Below are positions 37,278-58,330 of a stretch of 64,000 nt of DNA, one piece after another. The translations under genes and the position numbers were made by a program. Each line of letters opens with the position of its first letter. Within the stretch, counting starts at the first letter, position 1. The notes under the pieces are model-generated. The model had not been told where the DNA came from. It did no database searches and saw only the letters and a program-made list of their open reading frames with translations. Source of the DNA: Schizochytrium sp. TIO01 (lineage: Eukaryota; Protista; Bigyra: Labyrinthulomycetes); NCBI GenBank assembly GCA_004764695.1, contig SMSO01000032.1, forward strand, positions 8,092,483 through 8,156,482, written 5' to 3'.

Positions 37278-38837
37278 TCATAGTCTTGTGATTTTGAATC
37301 TTGGCATAGGATCAGGCACACCAGCTGTAGCCTGCTTCAAGGCAGGTTTCGGCAAGGTGGGATCTTCGAGGACAATGTTGTAACGTTTCACCAATTCACA
37401 AAGAAGTGTCCGCAGTTCAAGTTCAGCAGCGCGTTTGCCGAGGCATACTCTTGCTCCACTACCAAACGGATCCTTGGAAACAGCAGCATCCAACTTAGAA
37501 GTGAACGGACAGCCTTTCCGTGCACGAATATTTTCACGGAAGTAACGCTCTGGTTTAAATTCATTGGCATCGGGAATGAAGCTCGTTTCTCGCGTCTCGT
37601 AGGAAGGGCAAAGTTGTAAACAGGTTCCTGCAGGTACCTTCACACGAGAGTTGGGTAAAATAATGTCATGGTCAAGAATTCGAAGCCCTGTAAGAAAGCC
37701 CGAAGGGTAAAGACGATTAGATTCACGAATGAAAGCTTCAAGATAAGGCATCTTTGCAGATTTCTTAAACGGGCCGCCACCAAGGACCTCGCGAATTTCT
37801 TCACGAATCTTAGCTTGGCAATCGGGGTGATATCCAAGTGAAACAATTGCCCACTGAATGAGACCCATGGTTGTGCCGACACTTGCGCTCAAGAGATTCG
37901 TCATAATCAGGACTAGCTGATCCACAGGGATACCCTGCTCATCACGAAGATCTTTGAACCAACATGTTGGAATGTCCTTTTGATCAAAAATCCGCTTCAC
38001 CTCAGTATTGGTAATCTCGAGAATGCGATCAAAGCTAGCTTCCATTTTGGCATAACCATTCCACGGATGCAGAATCCAAGGTGTAAAATGTAAACGCATA
38101 GCAAGAGTCATGGCGGTTTCGTCAAGAGCAACGATTTCTTTCATAGGATTCTTGCAGTTTTTGTTTGTGATATCAGGACTTTCTCCTAGAGCGAGAGAAG
38201 CGAACATGTCAAGGGCTGCGTATTTCGTCCAATCAGCAATATTATCTGCATAATCTTCAAAATGATCCACCGCACCCCGAGCGGCCTCTTGCACCAGTGG
38301 CTCGTAACGCGCAACTGCATCCGTGTAGATACCTGGAGCTAGAATATCACGAGCTTTACGCCACTCCTCTCCCCAACCACTAAGTTTGTATGGGATATTG
38401 GGATCGTCTACGTCAGACTTTCCGCGCCAGAATTTCCTCAAAACATCAATATCTCCAGTGCCTCTAACATGTTTACCTTCGTTCTGGTAAATATGCTTGA
38501 CATCGTCTTGGTTGAAAACAATCAGCACTGTTTGACCACGAGCATCCTTGACGCGGGCCACGCCTTGCTCACGGCCAATTTCTTGATAAAGTTCAGTGAT
38601 CATCTGGAGTTGATCGTTCGCAAGCGTTAGGACCCATTTCCAACCTGGGCCCTTGACATCAGCAAGCTCAATGAAGTCGTTCTCTGGACTATTCGAAGCA
38701 GCAATTGTGCTTTTGGGCCGTCTTGCACTGTTATTCGAAAGAGATCCAGGTTGGGTTAAGCCCCCTGCAAGAGCTTTCGGGAGAAATTGACTTGATATCA
38801 AGCCTTTCCTACATCCAAAAACCCTAATGCCCATCAT
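37278..38837 (-). CDS. cytochrome P450, array copy 1 (mitochondrial-type presequence)
   Basis: WRKAR, I-helix LSASVGTT, ESNR (ExxR), FKPERY, heme motif PFGSGARVCLG. Confidence 0.96.
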   Translation of the reverse strand: MMGIRVFGCRKGLISSQFLPKALAGGLTQPGSLSNNSARRPKSTIAASNSPENDFIELADVKGPGWKWVLTLANDQLQMITELYQEIGREQGVARVKDARGQTVLIVFNQDDVKHIYQNEGKHVRGTGDIDVLRKFWRGKSDVDDPNIPYKLSGWGEEWRKARDILAPGIYTDAVARYEPLVQEAARGAVDHFEDYADNIADWTKYAALDMFASLALGESPDITNKNCKNPMKEIVALDETAMTLAMRLHFTPWILHPWNGYAKMEASFDRILEITNTEVKRIFDQKDIPTCWFKDLRDEQGIPVDQLVLIMTNLLSASVGTTMGLIQWAIVSLGYHPDCQAKIREEIREVLGGGPFKKSAKMPYLEAFIRESNRLYPSGFLTGLRILDHDIILPNSRVKVPAGTCLQLCPSYETRETSFIPDANEFKPERYFRENIRARKGCPFTSKLDAAVSKDPFGSGARVCLGKRAAELELRTLLCELVKRYNIVLEDPTLPKPALKQATAGVPDPMPRFKITRL

Positions 38838-39753
38838 TCTTTTCCTGTACTTGTTTTTTTTAAAGCGCGCATGATTTTCACAATACCAGTCAGTAAAAGG
38901 TTCTTGATTTCCTACTACAGGATATATGTTGTCTTACTATGAGCTTGAGCCTTCCCCTTTCCTACTAGATCCAAGGATTATTTCGAAGTTCTAGGTTTGC
39001 TGCTCGACCTATCCTCGGCCAAAGTTCACAATGCTACTATTTTCCATTTCCAAATATGTATCGACATGTTCAGACACTGTAACGATTGCGCATTAGTCGC
39101 ATCTTGATTGCGTGGTTATCGTCTTCAAACTCTAGTTATGATAAACTCTAGAAAACGCACTAATTGATCGTTCCCCACTATCTAAAGAGGAAAAAAATGC
39201 ACTATCTGTTGAAACGACTCATGAGCAATCAGAAGTCAGGACATGCACTGAGATAGGTAGAACAAGGAATACTTGGGCATGAGATGACAATAAAGAATTA
39301 CAAGTTTATTATTGTCTTCTATCACTCTCAAAGGTAATGAGTTTATAAAATCTTTAGCTTGAGTAAAATCTGAAGCTACCCCTCATTACTGGTTTTCCAA
39401 CACAATTTACCAAACAGGAATTTACTTTTTTAAAGAAAATAATTAATAAACTAAATAGAAGCCAGTTTTCCCGAGAGAGACAATGGTATAATAGATGAAA
39501 ATGCGAAGTTCTGCAGAGTGCTGACAAAGAAACCTGTTCAAAGACTATGGGCAATGTCTATTTTAATGAAATGATTCTTTAATATGGTGTTGCAAATTTA
39601 GTGTCTATATCTGTCCAAGTCGTAATTTTGCCATGTTCATGCCAAGCTCCAAAACGACTCTAGAAAGTCACAAGGATTGAAATTACAAGTACGGAGAAGC
39701 AAGCATGACAGACGAGGTGCATTAAAGAAAGAACAAAAAACTAAATGGCTTAT

Positions 39754-41317
39754 TTAATTTTTGACAGGGACAAGTTTAAAAGTAGGCATGTTCTTCGGCA
39801 TCATCAAAATATGAGAAATATTGCCTGTCTCAGGCTGACCAGGAGGATCCATAACCAATTCATATCTCTGCAAGAGCTCGCAAATTAGAGTTCGCAACTC
39901 AAGCTCTGCAGCACGCTTGCCAAGACAAGCACGCGAACCGTTTCCGAATGGGTCTCGACTTACAGCAGCATCCAAAGGTGACTTGATTGGGCAGGCCTTT
40001 CGTGTACGAATAACTTCGCGGTTAAAGCGTTCTGGATCAAAGACATCAGCGTCAGGAATCAATCGTTTGTCACGAGTTGCATACTGAGGAGACAGCTCGA
40101 TCAGAGTTAGAAATTCTTACGCGGCTAACAGGAAGGACAACATCATGTGTAAGGCGACGAAGACTTGAAAGAGGATTCATAGGGTAGAAGCGGGTCACCT
40201 CACGCATGACAGCTTCTAAATAAGGGATCTTAGCAGCTCTTGTGTACGGCTTCCCCCCAAGAACTGATTGTATTTCATGTCGAAGCTTCGTTTGCACTTC
40301 AGGATAATACAGCAAAGCTACACTAAACCACTGCATCAATGTTTTTGTGGTAGCAGTTGCTGCTGAAAGGAGAGGTCCTAACATATTCACAAGTTGAGCC
40401 CTCGTGAACTTTTGTTCGTCGCGAAGGTCTTTAAACCAACACGGTGGAACATCCTTGACGCCAAATAGTTCGTCTACTTGTACGGCGCCAATTTCAGTGA
40501 TTCGATCAAGCGCAGCTGTCATCTTATCGAAAGAACCTCTGGGTACCATCAAGGGTGGTGTAAAGGCAATCTTGATGCTCAAGATGGTACCTTCCCCATC
40601 CAGATGCACAACCTCTCTCAATGGGGAGATGGCATCGGGGTCAACAGTTTTGCTGTTACTACCGAGGGTAAGAGACGCAAACATATCGAATGAAGAGTAC
40701 TGCGTCCACAAATCCCACTTATCAAGGTATTGTTCGGCATGATCTACTGCAAAACGAGCAGCTTCTTGCACGAGGGGTTCGTATCTGGAGACCGCATCAG
40801 TGTTGATGCCTGCGTGCAATACTCTTCTAGCGTCATGTGACCTTTGGCCTGATAAAGACAGACTCAAAGCAAGGTTATCCTCACCTTCCCCATGGCGTTT
40901 ATGATATGCACGAATTGGCCAAAATGATGTCGCAGAGCCATCACAGTCCTTGCCCTCGTTCTGATATACATATTTTGCGTCCTCTTGGTTGAAGATCAGG
41001 GCACATGGTTCTGAACCAGCACTACCTGGCCAACGAACCCGCACGACTCCTTGTTCATGGCCAATACGTTCATACAGCTCCGAGCGAATTGTAATGGGGT
41101 TTTGAACTAACTTGAGAAGCCAAAACCAATTTGGCCCGTCGATGTCCTTAAACTCACGAATAGGGGCTTCGTTCTCTGGAGCATGAGATCCTTCTGCCCC
41201 GGCTGATGCGAGATCTACAGACTTGTGTCTACATGCCACTGAAGTTCTTGCAAATGCTGCTGGCTGCCATGAAAATCCAGAAACTCGCGTGGCTTTAGCC
41301 ACACTGCCAGCAAACAT
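39754..41317 (-). pseudogene. cytochrome P450, array copy 2, frameshifted near 40108 (pseudogene, assembly error or cryptic intron)
   Basis: The two ORFs (40070-41317 and 39754-40062) together form a full P450: LSAATATT, EVTR, FDPERF, PFGNGSRACLG. Against the paralog motif V.(V/I)PAGT, 5 nt are missing (ATT TCT A ACT CTG). Confidence 0.85.
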
Positions 41318-42594
41318 TTCTCAGAACTCTGTAGTACTAGATCACTTCCCCTCCAAGTAGCAGCTTTCGTGACGGAACCCCGAAGTTACGGATCTGCTTG
41401 CAGCGAGGTAGGTATAAAGAGCAGAAGAACTACAACCATTCGACTAATGTGAAATGACTAGGCACCTTGTCTACCCTGCATTATCAAAGCCTACATTCGA
41501 CACAATTCGACAGGACTCAAAGTGATATAGATAGGTAGGTAGGTGCCAATGCAGTATCAAAAGTTTGTTTCTTTGTGGTTGTTTGTTGCATATATTAATC
41601 TTTATATGTATATTAAGTTAAGACTAATTATTTTTCAATTTAACATGGAATAATAACATTTTAATTTAATTTTATTTTGTTAGTAGCGAGTCGATATCTG
41701 GGAACTATCGTGTCCCTTCTTTAAAACATTAAAATAAAAAAGTTATAAGAAATCAAAATAAGCTTTGACAATAATAATAATATTATATATATAAAAAAAA
41801 TACAAGTATTCAAAGAATATAGCATCTAACTCCACCCCTTCTCGCAATCCCTGCCTTGAAGAACAGTATATATTTCCATATCGTTTTGGACTAGCAAAGC
41901 ATTTGGGTTAGCAACAGAGAGAGTTAAATTAGAGTCTACTATTGCAGGGATACTTTGTAAAATTTAAAAGTTGGTAGCATGTAATAATTGCGATGTCAAT
42001 GCTTAAAAATTGAATATGATTGCGATACAATTCATTCTATGACTTCTTCGGAAAGTTCGAGTATAAAGTGATTTGAGTAGGTACTGCTATAGTTCTAAAA
42101 GACTGGTTTGAACTTTGTTTCGGTTCCTTTACAAGTAGGGAGGCGCCTCTTAGCTTTTTGCAGAGGCTATTCCAACAACCCTTTTTATAAATTGCATTGG
42201 TATTATCCCAAGTGAAAAAAGTCTGTGACGCCTTTTTTATTATTTCCAGTGCAACGCAGCTTCCGTGTTTCTACGTTTTTTGAAGCCTTAGTTCTATGAG
42301 CCATATTTTCCCTATAAAGACAAAGCGGCAGGTAGGGCTGCGTGCTTGCTATGTTCTCCCTCATCCGAGATCTTTCTACTCACCGTGGCTTCTTCTTCTT
42401 CTTCCTTGGAGCTCAACCTGGTGCTAATACATAGTGAGTAGTAGCATTTTCAATAACTGTTTTCATTAAAAATTATAAAAACTCTTTCATTAAAAATTAA
42501 TTATAATTAAAATTATAATTAAAATATAATTAAAATTAGACCGGGATGCGGAGATGCAATTACTACCAAACTAAACTGCCTGATCGCAAAGATC

Positions 42595-42620
42595 GCTCGA
42601 CTCGACTCGACTCGACTCGA
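42595..42620. repeat. (CTCGA)5 pentamer repeat
   Basis: gctcgactcgactcgactcgactcga. Confidence 0.85.
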
Positions 42621-42892
42621 CGCAACTCCAAGTTCACACAAAATCGGCCGACCAAACCATTTGCAAAAATTCGAGCGTCCGCGACCAGTTTTAATGATTT
42701 CTGGGTTGGCCAATCGTACGTTCGTGTGAACGATCATGCTTCAGGATTCATGAGTTATGAATTATGAGTTCCAGCTTTCAGGGAGAATGAAGGATTCGGA
42801 CCCTGCACAGTTCACTTGTCACTAGTTCAGCCTATGTGATCCCTATGGCGAACATCGGCAGGTGCCATAGGTTCCAACGAGCCTTAAGAATT

Positions 42893-42915
42893 TAATAATA
42901 ATAATAATAATAATA
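42893..42915. repeat. (AAT)n microsatellite
   Basis: taataataataataataataata. Confidence 0.85.
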
Positions 42916-44989
42916 AAATGTATGCCTTATGTAAAATTATTTATCTCACCTTTCTAAAATAAATGAATTATAATAAATCGATTGAAGATCGCTCGACTGA
43001 GGTTCGCTTTAAAATGCAAGATCGTCGCTGGCGAGAAGCTAGGCAGTAGGCACCTAGTGGCCAGATGGGCAGCTGCTTAGTCGCATCCGCCGTCAATCGC
43101 AGCGCTACGGATGGCCTCTTTTTTCAAGGTGTACTGCAGTGCCTTCTTCTATATAGCCTATGAGGTGACTAAATAAATAGCGGCTGATTTTTAATTCAAT
43201 AAAAACCAAATGATGAAAAAGAAAAAACAGAAAGAGAAAAAGCCTAAAGAACAAAATAATAGTAAGCAAAGCGCTTCCTCGTGAAGTGGGTGATTCGTAC
43301 ATTCTTCACCGCAAGTATTGTCCTCTGCCACTTTGGCCCCGCTCAGGAACACCTAGGATGGGTACGCAGGAATTTGTTGCGAAGACGTGCCTAAACTACT
43401 TCTTCCTGGCTGGATTCTAGTCTCTGAACATGTTTGTTGATTGATCGCAGCTAATTGTGTAGAATGTTGTTGGAGTGCAGACGCCGTGTCCGTGGGCCCG
43501 CATCGTTGGATATAGGCGGCTTTGCGGAAGTCCGTGGTCGGACCTCTGGTTCCATGCCAGAGGTTTCGAGGTGGTTTATCTTGCAGCGGGCGAAGCATTG
43601 AATGGGTGCTACCCCCTTAAAGTAATGAAGGCATATTCGAGGGTTTGTGAAACGACGTCGAGTCAGTACGTCCGGTGTGTATTGATAGGTGGCTGCCAAC
43701 ATCTATTCCAATGCTGAATGTGAAGAACCAATGACACGTTTTTGCAGGTAAACAGGAAATGCTCTTGAGCAATTTGACGCGGGTCGTGTAATTTAGATAA
43801 AGGTGTAGTGTTTAACGGGATCTGCGGCGCTTCTAAGAACCGTGTATTTGTAAAAGGGTGTGAACAAGAGATTATAAAATATTCATCTGAGGAATAGGCC
43901 ATCCAGGATGTCTAAAACTGATCAAATTGTGATCAATCACCTTAGAGCTCAGTCGATATTGAAATAGGTTTTGGAAATGTTGCTTTAATCGCAAGCTTTG
44001 TGGGTGGAAACCCTTCATATTAGACTTCTATGCCCATTGCTTCTTCAACACTCGGTACCCTGAAAGGTTTTTTAAAACTCGGACTACTAATCAAGTCAGA
44101 AGGTTCCATTGGACGTCACCTCTAAAAAGAGTTATCTGTAGCGTATAAGTTGTTTCCTTATTCACTTCTCCAGACGAAACCAAACTTTCTTCATTATAGA
44201 CTCACAACCTGTCGCATGCAACAGGTCGTTATACCATGGTACATGGTACTATACTCCAAAACTAACTCTGGCTTTGGCTTTGACAAATCAGAGAAGTAGG
44301 TTCGTACCTACTGTTGCAATGTCTGTCTAGTCATCCTTTTCTTTTATAATTTACTTTGAAAATATCTGTTTTCTTTTCTTTTTCTAATTACTCCACAACA
44401 GTAATAATAACAATAATAATAATAATAACAATAATTTAGACCTCTCTAGATATATATATATATATTGTTCAGAAGGCGAGGGCGGTGTTTTGGTGCATTG
44501 ATTGCAGTTCCTGTCTATATAGGATTGAAATATGGCATAACCTTGCGTGTAAAGACGGCAAATAGCATTACGAGGCAAGATTTTTCTGTTTCAGTTTTTA
44601 GTTTTTGTTTTTTCTGACTTTGTGATTTGATTATAAAGTTACACGCCAAGAATAGCGAGACCATAGTGCTGGTTTCAGATGTGGGTGGACAAAGAAAATG
44701 TACTCAAGGCCAATAGATGGAAACGTTTGAAGGGCAAATCTTTATCAAAGTGCGACTCTTTTGAATGAATCGTGCTAACATACATGGTTCCCTTTCGTAG
44801 CAAACACATGTATGGAATCTCTCGATGCAGGACTAGAACAAACTATAAGAAGGGATTGAAAAATCATAACAAAACTTTTGTATTTATGTGAGTCTACCTG
44901 TGCTTTGATAGACCGAAAGTTAAAACTTGACGCATTCATAAGACATTCAGAACTGAAACAAACCGTGATCTATAGAGCGAAGCTTGCAT

Positions 44990-46507
44990 TTAGTCTAGAC
45001 GTCTAACTTTGAAACTGGGAAAGGACTTGGGAACTGCAACCGTTCGCTGCTGGATCAAGGGACGCGGTTGAGAAGGCGGATCAAGAATGAGCTCGTATCT
45101 CTTCACGAGTTCACAAAGTATAGTACGCAGTTCCAACTCAGCAGCGCGCTTCCCGAGGCATACACGGGCGCCATTGCCAAAGGGGTCCTTGGATACTACA
45201 GAATCGAGCATGGCTCCCATGGGGCAACCCTTGCGAGCACGGATGTTTTCCCGGAGATACCGCTCAGGCTTGAACTCATCAGCATCAGGAATATGCTTAG
45301 TATCGCGAGGGGCAAAAATCGGAGCTATCTCCATCATGGTACCTGCAGGGACGCGTACACGGGAATAGGGGAGGACCAAGTCATGATCCAAGGTGCGCAT
45401 GCCAGTGCCTGCAGCAGCAGGATAGAATCTATTGGTTTCACGAAAGAACGCATCAAGATATGGCATCTTCACGTCCTTTGTGAAAGGCTTATCCCGACCG
45501 AGGTTCGCCATGACCTCTTCTCGAAGTTTTGTCTGCGCCTCCGGGTGAAAGAGAAGTGCAATAATCATCCACTGCATCAGACCCATGGTGGTTGCAATAC
45601 CAGCAGAGAGCAAGGGGCCCATAAGTTGTACAATTTGATCTCGCGTAAGGCCTTGCTCATCTCGCAGATCCTTAAACCAGCAATTCGGGATAGTCTCCTT
45701 TGAGAAGAGAGCGTCAACCTCATCCTTGGTTACGGCAAGGATTTGATCAAAAGCACCCTTGAATGTCTCATAACCATTCCTAGGATGGAAGAGCTTGGGT
45801 AAGAAATGAAGAACCACAGCCATGTTCAAAGCCTTCTCGTCGAGATTCACAACTTCTTTCATGGGTGAGTTGCAATCCGGGTCAACAGTTACCTTACTTT
45901 TACCTAGAGCCAAAGAAGAGAACATGTCAAATGCGGCATACTGGCACCAACCGCTCATGTTGTCAGTATACAACTCGACATAGTCGACCGCTCTAGCGGC
46001 AGCCTCTTGCACAAGAGGTTCGTATTTAGCTACTGCTTCGCTATAGATACCAGGGGAAAGGAGGGCGCGAGTCTTACGCCAGCGATCTCCAGATTGTGTC
46101 AGGTTGAGCGAGAGGTTGTCTTCATGGTCACCCGACAAATCTGTAAAGTACTTGACCAAAGGCCAAAGTCCCGTTGAACCAGTGACATCCTTACCCTCAT
46201 TTTGGTAAATATGTTTGATGTCATCCTGATTAAAAACAATCAAGGACTTCTTACCTTGTGCTGTACGGACATATGCAACACCTTGGTCACGCCCAATTTC
46301 GTCGTACAGCTCATGTCTCGTTTTAATTGGATCCTTTGTGAGCTTGAGGAGCCACCACCAACCAGGGCCTTTGACATCATCCAGCTCAATCACATTATCA
46401 TCTGGGTTATTCGGTGCGACTGAAGACTTTAAACGTAAGCTTTGGGCAGCGCCAAAGCCACGCCTCAAGTGCGTCAAGTTCCGAGGTTGGCGAGCAAAAG
46501 CAAGCAT
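44990..46507 (-). CDS. cytochrome P450, array copy 3 (mitochondrial-type presequence)
   Basis: ATG 46507 (MLAFARQPRNLTHLRRGF), WRKTR, LSAGIATT, ETNR, FKPERY, PFGNGARVCLG. Confidence 0.96.
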   Translation of the reverse strand: MLAFARQPRNLTHLRRGFGAAQSLRLKSSVAPNNPDDNVIELDDVKGPGWWWLLKLTKDPIKTRHELYDEIGRDQGVAYVRTAQGKKSLIVFNQDDIKHIYQNEGKDVTGSTGLWPLVKYFTDLSGDHEDNLSLNLTQSGDRWRKTRALLSPGIYSEAVAKYEPLVQEAAARAVDYVELYTDNMSGWCQYAAFDMFSSLALGKSKVTVDPDCNSPMKEVVNLDEKALNMAVVLHFLPKLFHPRNGYETFKGAFDQILAVTKDEVDALFSKETIPNCWFKDLRDEQGLTRDQIVQLMGPLLSAGIATTMGLMQWMIIALLFHPEAQTKLREEVMANLGRDKPFTKDVKMPYLDAFFRETNRFYPAAAGTGMRTLDHDLVLPYSRVRVPAGTMMEIAPIFAPRDTKHIPDADEFKPERYLRENIRARKGCPMGAMLDSVVSKDPFGNGARVCLGKRAAELELRTILCELVKRYELILDPPSQPRPLIQQRTVAVPKSFPSFKVRRLD

Positions 46508-48103: not shown

Positions 48104-49636
48104 TCACTTGGAAACAGGCACAAGCTTAATCTTTGGAAAAGGGTCGGGGATGAGTGTAGTCATAGTTTTTCTCTTTGGGGTAGACTGATGGGGAGGGTCC
48201 AAGACAAGCTCATAGTCATGAAGGAGCTTGCAGAGAATCGAACGCAATTCTAGATTGGCCGCCCGGCGACCAAGACAGGAGCGGGAACCACTGCCGAAGA
48301 AGTCTTTCGTCACAGCTGAATCAAGTTTCGATCCCATTGGGCAACCCTTGCGGCTTCGGATATTCTCCCGAAGATAACGCTCTGGCTTGAACTCTTGCGC
48401 ATCTGGGATTTGCTTCTGATCGCGTGCCACATGAATTGGGCAGAGATTCATCGGTGTGCCAGCCGGAACGCGAACACGAGATGAGGGCAGGACAACGTCT
48501 TGTTGAAGTGTGCGAATTCCAACCCCAGCAATTGGTGGATAGAAGCGATAGACTTCGCGAAAGAATGCCTCCATGTATGGCATCTTAACAGAGGTAGAAT
48601 ACGTCCCATCCTGAAGGAGGTCGAGGATTTCCTCACGCAATTTTACTTGTACATGTGGGTGTTCTACGGAAGCAATGATCAACCATTGCATCACAGTACG
48701 GGTTGTCGCAATAGCCGCGGAAAGAAGAACAGTGAAAACTCCTGTAATTTGCCGCGGAGTCAAACCCTGCTCATCACGCAGATCTTTAAAATAGCAAACG
48801 GGTACTTCAGTTTTACTAAAGAGATCGTCAACATGTCCCTTGGTAATTTCATGAATCCGATCAAAGCTTGCCGCAACCTTTTCAGGTCCTCTCCATGGGT
48901 GCGTAAACTTAGGAAGGTGTTGTAGTCTCACAGCGATACCCAGAGCAGCATCGTCAAGGTCAACAATTTCTCTCATGTCTGACTGACAATTCGGGTCTAC
49001 AGTTTTAAAGTTGGTACCGAGAGAAAGAGAGCAAAACATATCAAAAGCCGTGCGATCAGTCCAAAGAGCTAGATCATCTTTGTATTGATTCACAAAATTT
49101 ACAGAGGCACGGGCAGCATCTTGTACAAGACCTTCATACTTGGCCACTGCTGAGGAGTTGATTCCAGGGTTTAGGAGCTTTCGCGTTATCATTGCACGTG
49201 GAGTTGAGTGGAAAATATTGAGAGCTAGGTTGTCCGGGTGATCTCCGTCAAGTTCAGTTAGGTATTTCTTGATTGGCCACATCTGTACAGCGGCATGGAA
49301 GTCTTTTCCTTCGTTTTGAAAGACAAACTTTATATCTTCTACGTCAAACACGGTGATAGCATTCTTTCCGCGAGGTGAACGCATACGAGCAACGCCTTGT
49401 TTGCGGCCATACTGCTTGTACATCTTATCATGATTTCCAAACATATCACCTGCCAACATCGGGATCCACCACCATCCTGGGCCATCGATGTCTTTGAGCT
49501 CTTTGATAGGCTGCTCGTCGGAATTGGGGCTCGAAGTCACGGCAGCTGTTGTGGCCTTCGCACGGGCGAATGTGTTGACCGCTTTGCCTCTGGCACTACG
49601 CAAATGCCGAGGCAAAGTATGAGACAAACTGAACAT
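48104..49636 (-). CDS. cytochrome P450, array copy 4 (mitochondrial-type presequence)
   Basis: LSAAIATT, EVYR, FKPERY, FFGSGSRSCLG. Confidence 0.96.
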   Translation of the reverse strand: MFSLSHTLPRHLRSARGKAVNTFARAKATTAAVTSSPNSDEQPIKELKDIDGPGWWWIPMLAGDMFGNHDKMYKQYGRKQGVARMRSPRGKNAITVFDVEDIKFVFQNEGKDFHAAVQMWPIKKYLTELDGDHPDNLALNIFHSTPRAMITRKLLNPGINSSAVAKYEGLVQDAARASVNFVNQYKDDLALWTDRTAFDMFCSLSLGTNFKTVDPNCQSDMREIVDLDDAALGIAVRLQHLPKFTHPWRGPEKVAASFDRIHEITKGHVDDLFSKTEVPVCYFKDLRDEQGLTPRQITGVFTVLLSAAIATTRTVMQWLIIASVEHPHVQVKLREEILDLLQDGTYSTSVKMPYMEAFFREVYRFYPPIAGVGIRTLQQDVVLPSSRVRVPAGTPMNLCPIHVARDQKQIPDAQEFKPERYLRENIRSRKGCPMGSKLDSAVTKDFFGSGSRSCLGRRAANLELRSILCKLLHDYELVLDPPHQSTPKRKTMTTLIPDPFPKIKLVPVSK

Positions 49637-50505
49637 GATGGTGCTTAACTCTGTTTGTCAAGCTTGCTCGGCCTTCTATTTTCAATTTTCTCTCAACGAG
49701 GCATTAGAAGTTTAGTCATCATCTTTGTGAGTCACTCCCACAAGATAGAGGTTATAATACCAGGCATAGTACTACTTAGGGGCTTCTTCTCGTGATATGT
49801 GCTCCGTGGTAAAAGAAGGGATATATTGATGTGCACGGCGGACTCGCGGGAGCAAAGTACCAGAAAGTATTTCGGGTCATTTCATTACCGACTACGACAC
49901 CGACTTGTAGTCTTGAAGACTTCAACCTAACCGTAATTAAAAGCTTGCACAGTTGCCTTCAAGAGCAATACCACAACTTACGCTACTCATATTCTGGTTC
50001 ACACAAATTAAAAAAACTAAATTACAAACAACGATGATCAGATCAGCATTGTCATGGTGACACTATTTGAGTTTCGCTACTACTAAAGGCAGAATAATTA
50101 TCAAATTCTTTTTACTTTTACTTCTTTCTTTTTTTAATTAAATTATATTTATAATTTAAAACATTTCAAAATAAATTGGTGAATTAATTTTTTAATTTAG
50201 AAATAACATAACAAACATATTTTGTATGCTGAGACTGCTCTTTTTCAAGTCCTAAGAGGCTCTCTGAAGCACATTTCTTAATTCGCGAGCCTATACCCGC
50301 ACAAGCTTGCGGAACAATGATCGCAAGCTGTATAGAGACTTAAAGCTCTGCTCTATAAACTTAGATCTTAAACGTGAAATCTCAGAAGTCTCAAGTTTAA
50401 TTGGTATTTTATACTCGTTTCTTTCAACATAAAGAAAATTTAAAAGATGGTGATTATATTTCAGATTATTTTTGCTCTCAAAAGGCTTATCTTTCTGAAT
50501 CTATC

Positions 50506-52038
50506 TCATATTCGAATAGGCACCAATCTCACCTGCGGAAAGGGATCAGGGACCAGAGTAGAGTCAAATCTTTTGTTTGGCAGAGGCTGGCCAGGCGAAT
50601 CAAGCACAAGCTCGTATTCGCTCAAAAGCTTGCACAGAATCGCGCGTACTTCTAAATTCGCAGCTCGACGACCAAGACAAGAGCGGGAACCAGCGCTAAA
50701 AGGTTCTTTCGTCACAGCTGAATCGAGCTTTGCTCCCATCGGACAACCTTTGCGACTTCGAATGTTCTCACGAAAAAAACGCTCTGGTTTAAACTCGTGA
50801 GCATCCGGTATGAACTCGTCATCGCGAGCTTCATAGATTGGACAAAGAGTCATCGGTGTACCCGCTGGGATACGAACACGAGACGATGGCAAAACAATAT
50901 CATGCTCAAGTGTACGAACTCCCAATCCAGGGGTTGTTGGGTAAAGGCGATAGGCTTCGCGGAAGAATGCTTCCATGTATGGCATTTTGATGGAGGTCGA
51001 GTATGTTCCATTCTCAAGAAGATCGACGATCTCCTCGCGCAACTTGGCCTGTGCATCTGGGTGATAGGCGCAAGCCACTAGCATCCATTGAATTAGACCT
51101 CTGGTTGTGGCAACGGCTGCGGAAAGTAGAATAGTAAAAATGCCCGTAATTTGCTTTGGAGTTAGGCCTTGCTCATCACGAAGGTCTTTGAAATAGCACA
51201 AGGGCACCTGATCTTGGCCGAAGAGATTCTCAACATGTTCTTCAGTGATTTTATAAACCCGCTCAAAACTTTCTCTAAACTTTTCATATCCTCTCCACGG
51301 ATGAGTAAACTTGGGAAGGTACTGTAATCGTATAGCCAAACCCAGGGCTGTTGCGTCAAGCTCCGCGATCTCTTTCATATTGGATTGGCAATCGGGGTTC
51401 ACAGTTTCGTAGTTTTTGCCAAGGGAAAGGGAGCTAAACATGTCGAAAGCTGTGCGCTCCGTCCAAAGAGCTATATCATCTTTGTACTGATTCACAAATT
51501 CCACAGCGTTACGAGCAGCATCCTGTACAAGACCTTCATACTTTGCTACTGCAGAGGAGTTGATTCCGGGATTCAGCAATTTGCGTGTGATCATTGCACG
51601 CGGAGTTGAGTGAAACAAGTTGAGAGCTAGGTTGTCCAGGTGATCCCCGTCAAGCTCTATGAAAAATTTCTGGATTGGCCAGAGTTGACTAGAGCCGTGA
51701 AAGTCTTTTCCTTCGTTTTGAAAGACAAACTTTATGTCCTCTAGGTCAAACACAGTAACACCGATCTCTCCAAGGGATGTACGGACTCGAACAACGCCTT
51801 GCTCGCGGCCGTAGTCCCTGTAAATTTTTTCATGACTACTAAATATATCCCCTGCCAACATTGGGAGCCACCACCACCCGGGCCCATCAATGTCTTCAAG
51901 TTCTTTGATAAGCTGATCGTTGGTGTTTGAACTCGATGGCACAGTGGCTGATGTGGCCTTCGCACGGACGAACGTGTTGGTCGCTTGCCCTCTAACATTT
52001 GGCAAATGCCGAAGCAGAGAACGAGACAAGCCAAACAT
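50506..52038 (-). CDS. cytochrome P450, array copy 5 (closest paralog of copy 4)
   Basis: ATG 52038 (MFGLSRSLLRHLPNVRG), LSAAVATT, EAYR, FKPERF, PFSAGSRSCLG. Confidence 0.96.
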   Translation of the reverse strand: MFGLSRSLLRHLPNVRGQATNTFVRAKATSATVPSSSNTNDQLIKELEDIDGPGWWWLPMLAGDIFSSHEKIYRDYGREQGVVRVRTSLGEIGVTVFDLEDIKFVFQNEGKDFHGSSQLWPIQKFFIELDGDHLDNLALNLFHSTPRAMITRKLLNPGINSSAVAKYEGLVQDAARNAVEFVNQYKDDIALWTERTAFDMFSSLSLGKNYETVNPDCQSNMKEIAELDATALGLAIRLQYLPKFTHPWRGYEKFRESFERVYKITEEHVENLFGQDQVPLCYFKDLRDEQGLTPKQITGIFTILLSAAVATTRGLIQWMLVACAYHPDAQAKLREEIVDLLENGTYSTSIKMPYMEAFFREAYRLYPTTPGLGVRTLEHDIVLPSSRVRIPAGTPMTLCPIYEARDDEFIPDAHEFKPERFFRENIRSRKGCPMGAKLDSAVTKEPFSAGSRSCLGRRAANLEVRAILCKLLSEYELVLDSPGQPLPNKRFDSTLVPDPFPQVRLVPIRI

Positions 52039-54859
52039 TATTTGTTTGTTTGTTGGTACCAAGGTAGTTCTCGCCAAGGCTCTTTCACGCTCGCTGGAAA
52101 GGAGTAAATATCTATTAACTCGGGTACACCTCAAGCCAGAACAACCACTTAGGCTCTTTAAGGTTTTGCTGGCAACGAATCGCTGCTTTTGATGTCTGCT
52201 TGAGTTCCTTCATGTGTAATAATATAACACTAACTAGTACAACAACTTTAATCTTCGTCCTCGGAACTTACGACGCCAAATAGAACAAATGGTAGAATCC
52301 CATTGGGTAGATTTATGAGTCCTTACATATTTGTCGAAAGGTAATGTCGAAGTCAGCCGAAAGTTGGCAACCCGTAAGCGAGCTTTACTTCGTGTGTCCC
52401 TTTTGTAGCCTCTTTTATTTAAAAAAGTGCTACCTTCTTTGTTTTATGTTTATCTATTTACCTTTTTTCACTTTAAAAAATAAATTAAATTAAATTAAAC
52501 AATTTTGTATTTGTTCATTTTGAAAGAAATGTCTAGGAAATAAACGCAAAACATTCAATGGTTTCTGCTGACAAGTAATATGCTAGTTTCTTCTCGAACT
52601 CCAAGCTCTCACGTTTTCACCCAACGAGTAAAGAATTGCACAGAGGTTACTTTAATATATTCACGTCAATTTTAGAAGCAAGTTTTAATTCAAGTTTATT
52701 TTTGCCTTGATGCTTAGGTAGATAAGTGCCTAGATAATTACCAGGATTAACTAGACCTACATTGGAAACTTGAGAGAGTATGTAATTTTAATGAAAAATA
52801 TCCATCTTACGATATTAATCATAATGGCTAATTTCTTTAATTAAAATTGTTATTTTCTTTACTTTTGTTTTAAAACATTTTAAAATCATATTTACCGTAT
52901 CTATTATGCTTATTCCTACGCATTTATCATCCAATTCTTTTACATATAGTAGAGGGCCTAGTGCAAATTGGGAGCCTATCTAAACATAAGGAATCGCACT
53001 ATAATATCTTTGATAAAGTTCTTATATGTGTTGCAGTAACCAAGGGTGCTTCTTTCTGTCTGCTAAAGAGTTCTATTCGTCGGCCGCAAGTCCAAAAGAT
53101 GTAGAACTCGTAGGGCCAAAATTGGAGGTAAACAGTGTGTATGCACTACAAGAATAAACCATGAATACTCTGACTCTTCTTTAGACTCTGAGCTTTATGT
53201 GATATGTAGTAGCCATTTGTTTCCAAGCTTGACATTTTGATGCATTATAGACGGTAAGACCGTAGAGAGACAACAAAAGAAGGTGCAGGTCGCATGGTAT
53301 GTCTGCTGTACCTAGCTAGATAGTGTACGCAAAATGCCGTCTTCAAGGTAAGATTGAATCTTATGAATCTACTAGGTGCACTAGCTCTGTATTATAAACT
53401 TAAAAGCATGATTTGGTCAATGGACATATAATCCATGCAACGAACAGAATTAAGTGCAAAACTTCCGTGCATTCGTTGGTTCTACTGAAGATAGGGTATT
53501 CTGCATTTTAGGAATCGTAGCGTATTTGGATGTGGTATATTTAAATCTGTCTCAAATTCACAACTTCTAGATTGTTTAGTATAATAGGAATTGTTTCCTA
53601 ACTTGATTGCTAGATCTACAAAGATGGGTTCTCTATAATTACATGTGGAGTAGCCAGACATTGACTGTCAAGGTGAAAGAAAAAAGTTGTAGAACCCCTG
53701 TTAACGTAGGCATTGAAGGGATAGAGACCTGATAGTCTTGGAGCGAGTTATGCCATATCGAATTTAGTGCTTCAAGGAAAGCCTTGGCAAGCATGCTAAA
53801 CACTTATGAAGGGATGTATGCTTAGCTTATGCAGCTAGGTGATCTACTGCCTTTGGAGACGAACACCAAGGTAAATCGAGTCATATAAAATATAGACTAA
53901 GGCAGACTTGAGATAACTGTAGAGGTTAGGTCGATCAACAAGCCAGATCTTGCCTTTGCACATCCACTTGGTTATGCAGTACACTTTCATCTGTTAACTC
54001 CTCTAGGCTTCAAACCTTTGTGTCTGATAGTTTAGTTCTTCTATACAATTGTTAACACTTCAGAACTTGTGATTGGGTGCCATGAACTCTGATATTCTCT
54101 TGTCCACATGACCTTAAGATTGGTGATCTCAGTGATCACTCTCTGAACATACAGCCACATTGCTATGCACATCGTAATTCACTTAAACTAACTCTTGAAG
54201 GACGTTGGGATGCGGTCCTGTACCCTTGCTGCTCGTACTCCTAACTGAATAGAGTAAAGGTTGTCTACCTGTATGATATTCTCCTTGTCTCCTGCTCCTA
54301 TATATATTGACCATAAAGGATCGGAAGACCCTGAGTCCTGTCTAGCCTTTGAGCTACTTTACGTTGTAAGTCGAAATTGTTTGTTTCATGCACTGCAATT
54401 GCATATAAAGAAAAGAATACCTTGCAGAAAGGTTCAATGGTGAATTGATGAGGCGAAGTTTATGGTAGTACCTAGTGATTGTTCCATCCACAAGAATCTA
54501 TTTAGGTGGACAGAGATAGACTCTTCAAGGATTTTTGGTATTACGCTACTCTTAGTACCTGAGAGTGCTTAGGTAGTAGGTTGTAGGTTGAAGTACCAAC
54601 CGTTAGCACTTCGCATTTTGCTTAACTCATACACTTCGTGCATCGAATTTACAATTGGCTGGAGGTAGTAGGTACTACTAATCGGATAAGTGGGGAGTCT
54701 ATTATGGCTAGATTTGACACTTGCCTTTCTGATTGAATTAGCGACGTTTCCCTTCGTCATCTTGTTGGGTATATGCTTTTAGACGCATCGCACGCCCCCT
54801 TTGAGGAGCTCATCCTGCAAGTTCCTGAGTCTTGATATCTTTTTATCAGTCTCTGGATT

Positions 54860-55092
54860 GTATGATGAGAATGCGCAATTCAGCAACTTTGCAAAGGATA
54901 TTCCTCAACTCGCTCTTTCTTGACCCAGTCCGTGCACACGGCAACATTTCCAAAAACATTGAAAAAATTAGCAAGCCAAACTCCATACCTAGGGGCTTAA
55001 ACTTGTTATAATAGAGCTCTTCACGCGGAGGTAACCGCGCCAACGCCCAGTATGTGCAGCTCTTCTACTAAGTCAGAATCAAGAACTTCGAG
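54860..55092 (-). pseudogene. possible highly decayed 3' remnant of a further P450 copy
   Basis: Fragments in the correct order across frames: VLDSDLV, PRE..NKFKP.RY, VFGNVAVC, ELRNILCKV. Spacing is shorter than in the intact copies. Confidence 0.28.
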
Positions 55093-56800
55093 CACAAGCA
55101 GATCATAACTTAAAAGCAAAGCTCTCATCGGACACCTTCGGCTCCCAGGAGTCAGCTTTTTTTCACACCCCGAAAGGCTAACTGCGACATTCGTGCTGAA
55201 CGATTGTCGCTGTTTGCAACATTGTGAGTATTTGGAGCTTCGGCTGTCGCTTCCACGACCACTATAAAGCAGTATCGATCACGGCAGGCTTAGAAGGAGT
55301 TAACAAAAACATGCAAAAGCGCTGCAAAAAATATACTCAAAGTACTAAATCCCATCCTGGCTTTTGCAACCTGAAAACGCAAACGTTAAGAAACAGAACC
55401 CCACTCAGCTAGCTGGAGGGCCAGCTGGCCGGCTAACTTATAACTCAATTCCTCGGGGGTATCTAGTGGATGATTACGATTCCAGCGTGGATATAAAATT
55501 AAGCACCCAGACTAAAAACCCACCGACGATGTTTTGTGGAGGCGTATGAAAAGCCCACTGCTTATTTATTCATCATTTTAGTTAATCATAAAGGTGCCAA
55601 CTCGAACGATACTGATTGATCTTCGAATTCCGCCTGTTTCTTCATGAGCCTCATGCCTGATAGGCGATAAGTAGCGCAAGAAAGTAAATTGGTGCACTCC
55701 AGCCTCGATGTAGAAACTATAGCAACTGCCCGACTCTCCGCCACCAGCTTCACCGAAAATGCTCTGTGCCGAGATGTCCGCAGGGAAGTAGCCGCAGTTT
55801 CGAGACAGTGCCAAGGCAGCAAGAGTAGAATAATGGAAAAAACAGTTCCAGGCCGAGCTGCCTTTGCTATGAGCGGTAGTAGTCGTGTTAGGGTATTCGT
55901 TCTTGCGACCCCAGATTAAACTTTCTTTCAATTTCGAACATGACTGGTGAAGATCACAAGAGTGCATATCTACGTCCTACCTGCATGGACACCCTGCCCT
56001 GTTGAAGTGCAATGACAAGAGCTTTCACATCAACCTTCAAGCGAATGGGTCCATTCGAAGATTGGAGGTTGGTCTCAAAGTTGATAATGTGATGCGCAAC
56101 GATACTCTACTATCCATTTAATAATTATATTTATAAAACAAAATAAAATAAAAAATAAAAGGAAAAACGGAGCACCATGCCGTGCTGTGCAAATGTAGGT
56201 GAGCTGAGCTAGGCCTAGCCGATGATATTGATGGACAGCAAAATACTGATATTTGGAATGGCAGGGCTTTGAGTAATACATAGACTAAGGGCAAAGGTCG
56301 ACGTATAAAGATACCTTCAAAACATGATACCTACATAGCTATTTGCAGGTTTGAGAACCTTACTAGGAAGATTGTACGCATCAACAAATATAATTTTTGT
56401 AACAGCTTCTAATGCCTAGAGCAACTGGAACACCTATCATCTAGCTATGAACTTGAACCTTTATAGTTGTTTTATTAACCACCTCTGATGCAGTTCAAGG
56501 GTGCACTAAGAATGCATGACTAGGAAATCTATAGCCAAGTCCTTTTAGATTGAAAAATCTGCTTTCCTTCGACGTACTTTCACGAGCAAAAGCAGCTACC
56601 TACCTATAATCAGTACTACCTGATAACAATTAGCCAAGCAAAATTCAGTGCACTTATCAATCTTCAAATTCAATCCGCTTGCAAACCTCAAACGCATTGC
56701 AGCTGCAAAAGTGCTCTGCACAGCTTCTTAAGCGAGGCAAGTTGCTGGTACCTCCACCGATTCAATCAAGGGTCATAGAATTTTATCACGTCTTGAAAAG

Positions 56801-58330
56801 ATGTCAGCGCTCCTTACAGGACGAACTAAAACTTGGAATCGTTCGGCTTTCAAGTTAATTTCTCGGCGCAAGTCAAGTGCTACTACTGCTGCTGCAGATT
56901 TGGGCGGGGATCAAGAAGTTGAGCTTCGAGAACCGCATGAAGTGCCTGGCCCTGGGTGGTGGTGGCTTCTAAAGCTATCGAAACCTATGGACGAGACCTA
57001 TCAGGAACTCTACGATACCGTTGGACGCAAAGAGGGTAGTGCGCAGATCCGAGATGCCAAGGGAAATCTAAATCTTGTTGTGTTCAATCAAGATGACGTC
57101 CGTCATGTATATCAGAATGAAGGAAAGGACGTTCGAGGTACGTCATCGATTTGGCCCTCGATAAAGTACTGGAAGGAAAGGTCGGGTGATACCGATGAAA
57201 ACCATTCGCTCAACCTTTTGCTGCAAGGGCCACGTTGGAGGAATTCGCGTGATCTTCTCGGAAAAGGCATTTACACCGATGCTGTCGCAACCTACGAGCC
57301 TGCAGTCCAGGTCGCTGCACGAGAGGCTGTCGACTATGTAACAGACTACGAACATTCGCTTGATGTTTGGGCAGAACTTGCGGCTTTTGATCTATTTACA
57401 TCGCTCGCTCTTGGATCAAATCCGCGAACGACAGATCCGAACTGCAAAAACCCATTGAAGGAGGTTGTCGAGCTTGATTCGACAAGTCTTGGTATTGCTG
57501 TGCTGCTCGAATTCTTGCCATGGTTCGCTCGCCCTCGCAATGGGTATGAGAAAATGAAAGCCAGCTTCGATCGCATCGCCGACCTCACTCGACCTGAAGT
57601 TGAGCGTCTTTTTAATCAAAAAGATGTTCCAGTCTGCTGGTTTCGTGATCTTAGAGATGAACAAGGACTCTCTACTGATCGTTTGACGGATGTTATGGCT
57701 TTCATGCTCACTGCATCCATTGGCACAACTAAGGGTGTTCTTGAATGGATGCTTACATCACTTGCATATTATCCAGAATCTCAACAGAGACTTCGAGATG
57801 AAATTAGCAAGAATTTGAAGAATGGCCCTTACACTAAATCCGTGAAAATGCCCTATCTCGAAGCACTTTTCCGTGAGCAGCATCGTCGCTATCCCATGGC
57901 CCACATTTCCGGCCTTCGTACATTGAACCATGACATTGTCCTCCCCAATTCTAGGGTCCATGTCCCAGCTGGAACCACTATGCAACTTGCACCTCTATTT
58001 GAGGCACAAGATACTAACATCATCTCAGATGCGGATCAATTCATCCCTGAACGATACCTGCGCGAGAATAAAATTAAACGTAAGGGATGCCCGTTTTCTT
58101 CTAAGCTCGATGCTGCCGTCATTCGTGATCCGTTCAGCAACGGTGCTCGTGTCTGCCTAGGAAAACGTGCTGCTGAGCTTGAGGTTCGTACTCTTATTTG
58201 CGAGCTTGTGCGGCGCTATGAAATCGTGCTTGATCCTGCGACTCAACCTTTCCCAGGCTATCAGCACAAATCTGTCATGGTCCCAAACCCCATGCCAAAG
58301 GTCAAGCTTGTGCCTGTACAACATGCCTGA
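56801..58330 (+). CDS. cytochrome P450, array copy 6 (inverted; mitochondrial-type presequence)
   Basis: WRNSR, LTASIGTT, EQHR, FIPERY, PFSNGARVCLG. Confidence 0.96.
   Translation: MSALLTGRTKTWNRSAFKLISRRKSSATTAAADLGGDQEVELREPHEVPGPGWWWLLKLSKPMDETYQELYDTVGRKEGSAQIRDAKGNLNLVVFNQDDVRHVYQNEGKDVRGTSSIWPSIKYWKERSGDTDENHSLNLLLQGPRWRNSRDLLGKGIYTDAVATYEPAVQVAAREAVDYVTDYEHSLDVWAELAAFDLFTSLALGSNPRTTDPNCKNPLKEVVELDSTSLGIAVLLEFLPWFARPRNGYEKMKASFDRIADLTRPEVERLFNQKDVPVCWFRDLRDEQGLSTDRLTDVMAFMLTASIGTTKGVLEWMLTSLAYYPESQQRLRDEISKNLKNGPYTKSVKMPYLEALFREQHRRYPMAHISGLRTLNHDIVLPNSRVHVPAGTTMQLAPLFEAQDTNIISDADQFIPERYLRENKIKRKGCPFSSKLDAAVIRDPFSNGARVCLGKRAAELEVRTLICELVRRYEIVLDPATQPFPGYQHKSVMVPNPMPKVKLVPVQHA

What the first reader, a model, noticed from the sequence alone, without database searches (positions are those of the whole stretch)
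37278..58330. Tandem array of six mitochondrial-type cytochrome P450s in a non-animal eukaryote
Seen: six paralogs in 21 kb, five on the minus strand and one inverted, with no intron needed in the five intact copies. None has the hydrophobic N-terminal ER anchor. Each begins with an Arg/Ser/Ala-rich leader with no acidic residues, and each leader ends in R-x-K-[S/A] (RPKS, RHKS, RLKS, RAKA, RAKA, RRKS), followed by a GP(G/N)W.W hinge. They also carry (Y/F)QNEGK and CLG(K/R)RAA(E/N)LE, which resemble mitochondrial-clan P450s (CYP11/12/24/27). Established: the mitochondrial P450 clan is classically regarded as animal-specific and is driven by adrenodoxin. Inference: this is a lineage-expanded mitochondrial P450 oxidation system in a protist, with unknown substrate. 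Sterol, carotenoid or PUFA modification are candidates for a lipid-rich organism. No redox partner gene lies in the window.
Basis: partly seen in the sequence, partly recalled or inferred. Interest (0 to 1): 0.82.

Follow-up and report, generated by a model that had tools for sequence, protein, structure and literature searches.

The report
Mitochondrial-type P450 gene array in protist
A marine protist (a labyrinthulomycete) carries six side-by-side cytochrome P450 genes, one of them broken, whose closest named relatives are the mitochondrial P450s long thought to exist only in animals, so this enzyme type probably has a wider and older origin than the textbooks say.

Summary
Window 37278-58330 holds six P450 paralogs (44-71% identical). 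Five are intact single ORFs. The second is broken by a frameshift near 40,090-40,117.

- **Leaders.** None of the six has a hydrophobic anchor. Each has an acid-free, basic leader like those of citrate synthase and ATP synthase alpha and beta in the same genome. Most other P450s of the genome carry anchors.
- **Profile search.** A profile built only from labyrinthulomycete and other protist relatives scores every mitochondrial P450 in the PDB at 251-304 bits and every other P450 at 203 or less.
- **Trees.** Window family, protist relatives and named animal mitochondrial-clan P450s separate from all other sampled P450s with 100/99 support.
- **Independent methods.** Foldseek and language-model features point the same way.

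One correction: the family is not inside the animal clan. It belongs to a large, mostly unnamed protist sister clade, all with presequence-like N-termini. Known members are a dinoflagellate (Cladocopium) and marine-protist transcripts of unnamed taxa.

The labyrinthulomycete branch alone has lost the I-helix acid. Two adrenodoxin-type ferredoxin genes lie elsewhere in the genome. Localisation, redox partner and substrate remain inferred. The literature searches found no description of this family.

The parts
37278..38837 (-). P450 copy c1, intact, 519 aa; leader = codons 1-43 (38709-38837), ending RPKS
   Evidence: Single ORF. PF00067 at 3.2e-47. AlphaFold2 model with mean pLDDT 71.7; its best Foldseek matches are CYP11B1, CYP11B2, CYP11A1 and CYP24A1.
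39754..41317 (-). P450 copy c2, broken: N-terminal 415-aa frame (40070-41317) and C-terminal 102-aa frame (39754-40062). Frame shift at about 40,090-40,117. Leader 41219-41317, ending RHKS
   Evidence: The two frames match profile positions 42-353 and 378-456. The three-frame translation shows the shift and the loss of the conserved PAGT strand. The genome search reports the two overlapping pieces.
44990..46507 (-). P450 copy c3, intact, 505 aa; leader 46424-46507, ending RLKS
   Evidence: ORF, PF00067 at 3.7e-51. No in-frame ATG upstream; in-frame stop 49 codons upstream.
48104..49636 (-). P450 copy c4, intact, 510 aa; leader 49553-49636, ending RAKA
   Evidence: ORF, PF00067 at 5.7e-45. 71% identical to c5, with dN/dS 0.16.
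50506..52038 (-). P450 copy c5, intact, 510 aa; leader 51955-52038, ending RAKA
   Evidence: ORF, PF00067 at 2.4e-49. dN/dS 0.16 against c4.
56801..58330 (+). P450 copy c6, intact, 509 aa, inverted relative to the others; leader 56801-56875, ending RRKS
   Evidence: ORF, PF00067 at 1.3e-43. A near-identical protein (P0003) is held from another public assembly.

Best explanation
The locus is a tandem array of five working genes and one pseudogene. They encode a labyrinthulomycete-specific subfamily of mitochondrial-type (class I) cytochrome P450s.

Shown here:
- The proteins are full-length P450s with intact ExxR, PERF and Cys-pocket motifs.
- They lack an ER anchor and begin with an acid-free, basic, Ser/Ala-rich leader that ends in a conserved R-x-K-(S/A).
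- Together with a large protist clade they form the sister group of the animal mitochondrial P450 clan (CYP11, CYP24, CYP12, CYP49, CYP301, CYP302 and others).

Inferred:
- The leader is a matrix-targeting presequence cut by the mitochondrial processing peptidase at the R-x-K-S site, which fits the R-2/R-3 cleavage rule.
- The mature enzymes sit on the matrix side of the inner membrane.
- They receive electrons from NADPH through an adrenodoxin-reductase-type flavoprotein and one of the two adrenodoxin-type [2Fe-2S] ferredoxins encoded elsewhere in the genome.
- The ferredoxin docks on a basic proximal face. That face would be built from the (K/R)-R of the L-helix, the basic residue just before ExxR, and a clade-specific insert after PERF that carries a near-invariant Arg-Lys.
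- Tandem duplication under purifying selection has diversified substrate or regio-specificity.
- The substrate is unknown. A hydrophobic lipid such as one of the organism's own sterols is my best guess, at low confidence.
- The family-wide replacement of the I-helix acid by Gly or Ala implies an altered proton-delivery route to the haem-bound oxygen.
For: **Family and integrity.** PF00067 over nearly the whole profile in five copies. Conserved motifs are present. c4/c5 dN/dS is 0.16.

**Leaders.**
- The six copies have 0 acidic and 4-7 basic residues in the first 30 residues and no hydrophobic segment. Most other P450s of the same genome have an anchor.
- Named microsomal P450s have a maximum hydropathy of 2.4-2.7. 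The window family, 46 protist relatives and 14 named animal mitochondrial P450s lie at 0.03-0.5.
- Citrate synthase and ATP synthase alpha and beta of the same genome start with the same kind of leader. The cytosolic V-ATPase A and B subunits do not.
- R-x-K-S also ends the leaders of homologues P0028, Aplanochytrium P0335 and Hondaea P0031. Two homologues come from transcript assemblies (P0027, P0335).

**Kinship.**
- Single-sequence and profile searches of the PDB put CYP24A1 and CYP11A1 first.
- A profile with no animal sequence scores all 11 mitochondrial PDB P450s at 251-304 bits and all others at 203 or less.
- A protist-only profile scores the window family at 294-313 bits, named animal mitochondrial P450s at 251-312 and every other group at 59-180.
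- The split is supported in three trees: FastTree with 113 rows at 99; IQ-TREE LG+C20 at 100 SH-aLRT; careful IQ-TREE LG+G4 at 100/99.
- The best Foldseek matches are all mitochondrial P450s.
- The nearest language-model clusters include 'cytochrome P450 12a4, mitochondrial'.

**Redox partner.** Two adrenodoxin-type ferredoxin genes are in the genome. Their best PDB matches are Etp1, FDX2, Yah1 and adrenodoxin.
Against: - No targeting predictor (TargetP, MitoFates) and no experiment was available, so localisation rests on composition and analogy.
- An adrenodoxin reductase gene was not sought.
- The basic K-helix residue five positions before ExxR, which I recall as used by animal enzymes for adrenodoxin binding, is acidic here.
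- The I-helix acid kept by all animal and other protist members is missing, so the chemistry may differ.
- The tree's outgroups were limited to what the searches returned. Clans 7, 19, 26, 51 and others were represented only in the PDB profile ranking, not in the tree.
- Taxon labels for most protist relatives are missing.
Confidence: 0.7

Rival explanations
1. The proteins are true relatives of mitochondrial P450s but are not mitochondrial in this organism. The leader might send them elsewhere or leave them soluble in the cytosol. They might then take electrons from another donor, such as the microsomal reductase or a different ferredoxin.
For: No localisation predictor or experiment was run. 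One of the adrenodoxin-contact lysines of animal enzymes is acidic here, and the I-helix acid is lost. Both show functional drift from the animal model.
Against: The leaders match those of bona fide matrix proteins of the same genome and differ from cytosolic proteins. The same leader type is kept across the whole protist clade and the animal clan. The R-x-K-S end is conserved across genera. I read no PTS2-like motif or signal-peptide-like hydrophobic core in the leaders (read by eye, plus the hydropathy figures).
Confidence: 0.15
2. The likeness to the mitochondrial clan is convergent or a long-branch artefact. On this reading the genes belong to another clan, microsomal or bacterial-type, that happened to lose its anchor.
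For: Deep P450 phylogeny is notoriously hard to resolve, and my outgroup sampling was uneven. With the narrow family profile, a few non-mitochondrial P450s score within about 20 bits of the mitochondrial ones.
Against: Five independent kinds of evidence agree:
- Full-length profile scores show a gap of about 50 bits.
- Cross-scoring with a protist-only profile gives the same grouping.
- Three tree methods, including a site-heterogeneous model, give 99-100 support.
- The predicted structure matches mitochondrial P450s best.
- Language-model features point the same way.

The search of 1.84 billion representatives returned no closer family of another kind.
Confidence: 0.04
3. The protist clade, or the labyrinthulomycete branch, got its mitochondrial-type P450 by gene transfer from an animal or the reverse. 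The shared ancestry would then say nothing about an early eukaryotic origin.
For: Labyrinthulomycetes and dinoflagellates live in close contact with marine animals. Fungi and plants are said to lack the clan (PMC2965670), which gives a patchy distribution. A few non-animal or unlabelled sequences (oomycete P0125, P0129, P0021) fall on the animal side of the split.
Against: The window family is nested deep inside a very diverse protist clade with long internal branches, not among animal sequences. The protist side has its own shared insert after PERF. Identity to animal members is only 20-26%. Any transfer would have to be ancient.
Confidence: 0.1

Closest known systems
Animal mitochondrial P450 clan (CYP11A1, CYP11B1/B2, CYP24A1, CYP27; arthropod CYP12, CYP49, CYP301, CYP302, CYP362)
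   Same: - The N-terminal leader is presequence-like and there is no ER anchor.
- The Cys-pocket and L-helix motif is C-x-G-(K/R)-R-x-A-E-x-E.
- A basic residue sits just before ExxR.
- An (F/Y)-x-N-E-G motif follows the hinge.
- These are the best sequence, profile, structure and tree neighbours among all named P450s.
- Adrenodoxin-type ferredoxins are available in the genome.
   Different: - The family is sister to the animal radiation, not nested in it.
- Identity is only 20-26%.
- The I-helix acid is replaced by Gly or Ala.
- There is a 10-12-residue insert after PERF.
- The lysine five positions before ExxR is acidic.
- The host is a heterotrophic stramenopile.
- Function and localisation are untested.
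Unnamed protist P450 clade (for example the Cladocopium goreaui protein auto-named '1,25-dihydroxyvitamin D(3) 24-hydroxylase, mitochondrial', plus MMETSP and EukProt transcripts)
   Same: They lie on the same side of the split, with 99-100 support. They share the insert after PERF with its near-invariant Arg-Lys. Their N-termini are presequence-like.
   Different: These relatives keep the I-helix Asp and mostly have C-x-G-(A/S/G)-R rather than (K/R)-R. Identity to the window family is 22-28%. No tandem array is known for them.
Hondaea fermentalgiana 'Cytochrome P450 CYP12A2' (GBG33029.1 and others) and the Aplanochytrium stocchinoi P450 A0A7S3PH94
   Same: They belong to the same labyrinthulomycete family, with 100/100 support. 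Identity is 44-48% for Hondaea P0006, and the Aplanochytrium member is more distant (33% to c1). They show the same loss of the I-helix acid and the same R-x-K-S leader end. Hondaea has two adjacent copies fused in one gene model.
   Different: Their names come from automatic annotation and imply an insect family to which they do not belong. The copy number and layout differ from the six-gene array here.

Membership tests
Cytochrome P450 superfamily (PF00067) | P450 fold with ExxR, PERF and the F-x-x-G-x-R-x-C-x-G haem-thiolate loop | tested here: met
   Pfam E-values run from 1e-43 to 4e-51 for the five intact copies. The motifs are invariant in the alignment. The AlphaFold2 model has the P450 fold, with TM 0.71-0.73 to CYP11B.
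Mitochondrial P450 clan | Groups with named mitochondrial-clan P450s to the exclusion of other clans | tested here: met
   The split has support of 99 (FastTree), 100 (IQ-TREE LG+C20) and 100/99 (careful IQ-TREE). The PDB profile ranking gives 251-304 bits for all mitochondrial entries and 203 or less for all others.
Mitochondrial P450 clan | Falls inside the animal radiation of the clan (among the CYP11, CYP24, CYP27, CYP12, CYP49 and CYP30x families) | tested here: not met
   The window family lies on the protist side of a 99-100 supported branch that separates it from all named animal members.
Mitochondrial P450 clan | Cleavable N-terminal matrix presequence in place of a hydrophobic ER anchor (sequence level) | tested here: met
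   The leaders are acid-free, basic and non-hydrophobic. They match the leaders of matrix proteins of the same genome. The R-x-K-S end is conserved.
Mitochondrial P450 clan | Protein actually resides in mitochondria | not testable with these tools
   This needs GFP fusion, fractionation or proteomics. No targeting predictor was on hand.
Mitochondrial P450 clan | Basic proximal residues used for adrenodoxin docking (two K-helix lysines, L-helix Arg-Arg) | tested here: inconclusive
   The L-helix (K/R)-R and the basic residue just before ExxR are present. The residue five positions before ExxR is Glu or Asp instead of Lys. Which residues dock adrenodoxin in animal enzymes is from my own knowledge, not tested here.
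Mitochondrial P450 clan | Electron supply by adrenodoxin-type ferredoxin plus its reductase | not testable with these tools
   The prerequisite is only partly shown. Two adrenodoxin-type ferredoxin genes are in the genome. The reductase was not sought, and electron transfer needs an assay.
Mitochondrial P450 clan | I-helix acid-alcohol pair (D/E-T) for oxygen activation, kept by animal members | tested here: not met
   All window copies and all labyrinthulomycete homologues have (G/A)-T-T. All other protist and animal members sampled have (D/E)-T-T.
Microsomal (class II) P450s | N-terminal transmembrane anchor | tested here: not met
   Maximum hydropathy is 0.71 or less in the first 60 residues of the window copies (19-residue windows) and 2.4-2.7 in named CYP2, plant and fungal P450s (17-residue windows over the first 45 residues).
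Bacterial class I P450s | About 400 aa, no leader, groups with bacterial families | tested here: not met
   The window proteins are 505-519 aa with leaders. The bacterial sequences sampled fall on the other side of the main split.

The most novel reading that the evidence does not exclude
The mitochondrial P450 system, meaning a presequence-bearing P450 fed by adrenodoxin-type ferredoxin, is not an animal invention. It has a diverse sister lineage with known members in a stramenopile group (labyrinthulomycetes) and an alveolate group (a dinoflagellate), so it would date to early eukaryotes or to a very old transfer. The labyrinthulomycete branch has in addition dropped the I-helix acid, which suggests a different way of activating oxygen or a non-standard reaction.
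Probability: 0.55. Interest if true: 0.75.

Novelty: new variant of a known kind. Interest (0 to 1): 0.62.

Why it matters
Reviews and genome papers state that mitochondrial P450s are specific to animals (PMC2965670) and list the clan among the metazoan clans (PMC8110760). As I recall the field's usual account, which I could not check in the library, they arose when a microsomal P450 was mistargeted in an early animal. A well-supported protist sister clade with the same kind of leader would move that origin outside animals and make it testable in a culturable, transformable organism. It also flags a set of uncharacterised oxidases in industrial oil-producing thraustochytrids, which make cholesterol and other sterols (PMC10174431). 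Finally, the family has naturally lost the I-helix acid, which could be informative about P450 proton delivery.

Tried and rejected
I could not fetch the roughly 1.7-kb Logan contigs, which are probably transcripts, to check 5' ends or the gene neighbourhoods of relatives.
- **Word-based protein search with the wide alignment** returned the same candidate set as the single query and none of the protist relatives. It served only for relative scores.
- **The 113-row IQ-TREE run with the mixture model** did not finish in two calls. I replaced it with FastTree on all rows and IQ-TREE on 55 rows.
- **Ten literature searches** found no paper on mitochondrial-type P450s outside animals. Three review papers that might settle this are not held.
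  - The oomycete P450 survey does not mention mitochondria or clans.
  - The Blastocystis paper only reports absence of P450s.
- **A redox partner or pathway gene inside the window**: rejected. The neighbours are a formin, Snf7, a CLASP-like protein, an IQ protein and a DAO/BFD flavoprotein.
- **Extra decayed P450 copies in the two long gaps**: rejected.
- **A 25-nt intron (GTAAGA...AG) as the cause of the c2 break**: considered. It would restore the frame but delete about 10 conserved residues, so I prefer a frameshift pseudogene.
- **Split ferredoxin gene L049**: it was searched by its first exon only, by reference.
Full report
**What is there.**
Window 37278-58330 holds six cytochrome P450 genes, five on the minus strand and one on the plus strand.
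- Five are single uninterrupted ORFs of 505-519 aa that match Pfam PF00067 over almost the whole profile, with E-values from 1e-43 to 4e-51.
- The second copy is split between two frames. The frame changes at about 40,090-40,117 and the conserved PAGT strand is lost. I read it as a pseudogene. A 25-nt GT...AG removal would restore the frame but would delete about ten conserved residues.
- The copies are 44-71% identical. The youngest pair, c4 and c5, has dN/dS 0.16, and older pairs are saturated at silent sites.
- tblastn finds no further relic in the window.
- A six-frame search of the 64-Mb, 37-contig genome finds this family only here. About twenty other P450 genes in the genome are 34% identical or less over the C-terminal part.

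**Whose genome.**
- The nearest named proteins are from Hondaea fermentalgiana (44-48% identity, auto-named 'CYP12A2') and Aplanochytrium stocchinoi. The host is therefore a labyrinthulomycete.
- The genome size resembles the 63 Mb reported for Schizochytrium limacinum SR21 (PMC7179369). That is a lead only, not an identification.
- The neighbouring genes are ordinary eukaryotic housekeeping genes.

**The leaders.**
- Each of the six proteins has no acidic residue and 4-7 basic residues among its first 30. None has a hydrophobic stretch in its first 60 residues; the maximum 19-residue hydropathy is 0.71 or less. Most other P450s of the same genome have an anchor-like segment (1.0-2.5).
- As a control from the same genome, citrate synthase and ATP synthase alpha and beta begin with the same kind of leader. 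The cytosolic V-ATPase A and B subunits begin with acidic residues.
- The R-x-K-(S/A) end of the leader recurs in homologues from other genera: P0028, Aplanochytrium P0335 and Hondaea P0031. It fits the R-2/R-3 rule for the mitochondrial processing peptidase. That rule is from my own knowledge.
- In-frame stops lie 2-58 codons upstream of each ATG, with no upstream ATG.
- Two homologues known from transcript assemblies begin with similar leaders. This argues against a hidden upstream exon, but it is indirect.

**Kinship.**
Several independent lines agree.
- *Single protein against the PDB:* CYP24A1, ancestral CYP11A1 and CYP11B2 rank among the first four matches, with CYP76AH3 third.
- *Family profile against the PDB:* CYP24A1 scores 98.5 bits and ancestral CYP11A1 91.5. 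The next best scores 76.
- *Search of 1.84 billion representatives:* 171 proteins score below 1e-30.
  - After the labyrinthulomycete members, the single-domain hits are a large set of unnamed eukaryotic proteins. They come from MMETSP, EukProt and transcript-sized Logan contigs.
  - One cluster holds a Cladocopium goreaui protein auto-named after CYP24A1.
  - Their N-termini are presequence-like.
- *Protist-only profile:* it scores the window family at 294-313 bits, fourteen named animal mitochondrial-clan P450s at 251-312, and CYP2, plant, fungal, bacterial and the genome's other P450s at 59-180.
- *Profile of labyrinthulomycete plus protist sequences, with no animal sequence:* it scores all eleven mitochondrial P450 sequences in the PDB at 251-304 bits. 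The best non-mitochondrial one, CYP46A1, scores 203.
- *Trees:* the group of window family, protists and animal mitochondrial clan is separated from everything else.
  - Support for that split is 99 in FastTree (113 rows), 100 SH-aLRT in IQ-TREE LG+C20 (55 rows) and 100/99 in careful IQ-TREE LG+G4.
  - The protist side has 99-100 support, and the labyrinthulomycete family inside it has 100/100.
  - As a check, a fly protein that I had left unlabelled fell inside the arthropod CYP12 group.
- *Structure:* the AlphaFold2 model (mean pLDDT 71.7) has CYP11B1, CYP11B2, CYP11A1 and CYP24A1 as its best Foldseek matches.
- *Language-model features:* the nearest clusters are arthropod and mollusc ones, including 'cytochrome P450 12a4, mitochondrial'.

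**What differs from animal members**.
- The family is sister to the animal radiation, not inside it.
- The whole protist side shares a 10-12-residue insert between PERF and the Cys pocket, with a near-invariant Arg-Lys. In P450 structures this region lies on the proximal, partner-binding face, so I infer a role in ferredoxin docking.
- All labyrinthulomycete members have Gly or Ala where every other member sampled has the I-helix Asp or Glu; the following Thr is kept. This confirms another first-stage note (s1-821958) and shows that the loss is old and conserved, not decay.
- The L-helix (K/R)-R matches the animal G-R-R, but the residue five positions before ExxR is acidic instead of lysine.

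**Redox partner.**
- None lies in the window.
- The genome has two adrenodoxin-type [2Fe-2S] ferredoxin genes. One has a presequence-like start and a long N-terminal extension. The other is split by an intron. Their best PDB matches are Etp1, FDX2, Yah1 and adrenodoxin.
- For the split gene only the first exon was searched, by reference.
- I did not look for the reductase.

**Mechanism.**
- *Shown:* homology, intact catalytic motifs, leader type, clade membership and purifying selection.
- *Inferred:* import into mitochondria, cleavage at R-x-K-S, and electron supply from NADPH through a ferredoxin reductase and an adrenodoxin-type ferredoxin to a basic proximal face. Also inferred are diversification of specificity by tandem duplication and an altered proton relay caused by the missing acid.
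- *Substrate:* unknown. The described sterol pathway of a related thraustochytrid uses only CYP51G1 and CYP710A (PMC10174431), so these enzymes are not accounted for there. Oxidation of sterols or other lipids is a guess.

**Novelty.**
- The literature I could search treats mitochondrial P450s as animal-specific (PMC2965670) and as one of the metazoan clans (PMC8110760).
- Ten searches found no description of a protist counterpart. Key reviews are not held, so earlier mention cannot be excluded.
- Automatic annotations ('CYP12A2', 'vitamin D 24-hydroxylase, mitochondrial') already hint at the likeness.
- I rate the finding a new variant of a known kind, of moderate to high interest.

**Limits.**
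- No localisation predictor or experiment was available.
- The tree's outgroups were limited to sequences the tools returned.
- Most protist relatives carry no taxon name.
- The direction and age of the animal-protist link are unresolved.

Noticed in passing
G000:C13:6973751-6973987 (L050) and G000:C31:2406567-2406788 (L049): The genome has two adrenodoxin-type [2Fe-2S] ferredoxin genes. L050 is a 243-aa ORF with a presequence-like start and an N-terminal extension of about 140 aa. L049 is split by an intron.
   Followed up: partly
G000:C6:1065978-1067222 (L021) and G000:C14:25943-27187 (L022): Two unrelated P450 loci give identical scores (250.3 bits) and identical 607-aa open frames. This is either a segmental duplication or an uncollapsed haplotig in the assembly.
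   Followed up: no
window 28981-30510 (+): An FAD-dependent oxidoreductase (DAO family) with a C-terminal BFD-like [2Fe-2S] domain, noted by another first-stage entry. It shows no evident link to the P450 array.
   Followed up: partly
window 41318-44989 and 52135-56800: Two long gaps inside the array hold no ORF over 130 aa, no tRNA and no P450 relic. GC falls to 0.366 at 52-54 kb.
   Followed up: partly
P0125 (Thraustotheca clavata OQR98394.1, residues 377-876): An oomycete 2157-aa gene model holds a P450 domain with a G-R-R L-helix. It falls on the animal side of the mitochondrial super-clade rather than with the protist side.
   Followed up: partly
P0026 (Hondaea fermentalgiana GBG33029.1, 1527 aa): A gene model that fuses an unrelated N-terminal 535 aa with two adjacent copies of this P450 family. 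It is probably a merged annotation of a tandem pair.
   Followed up: partly
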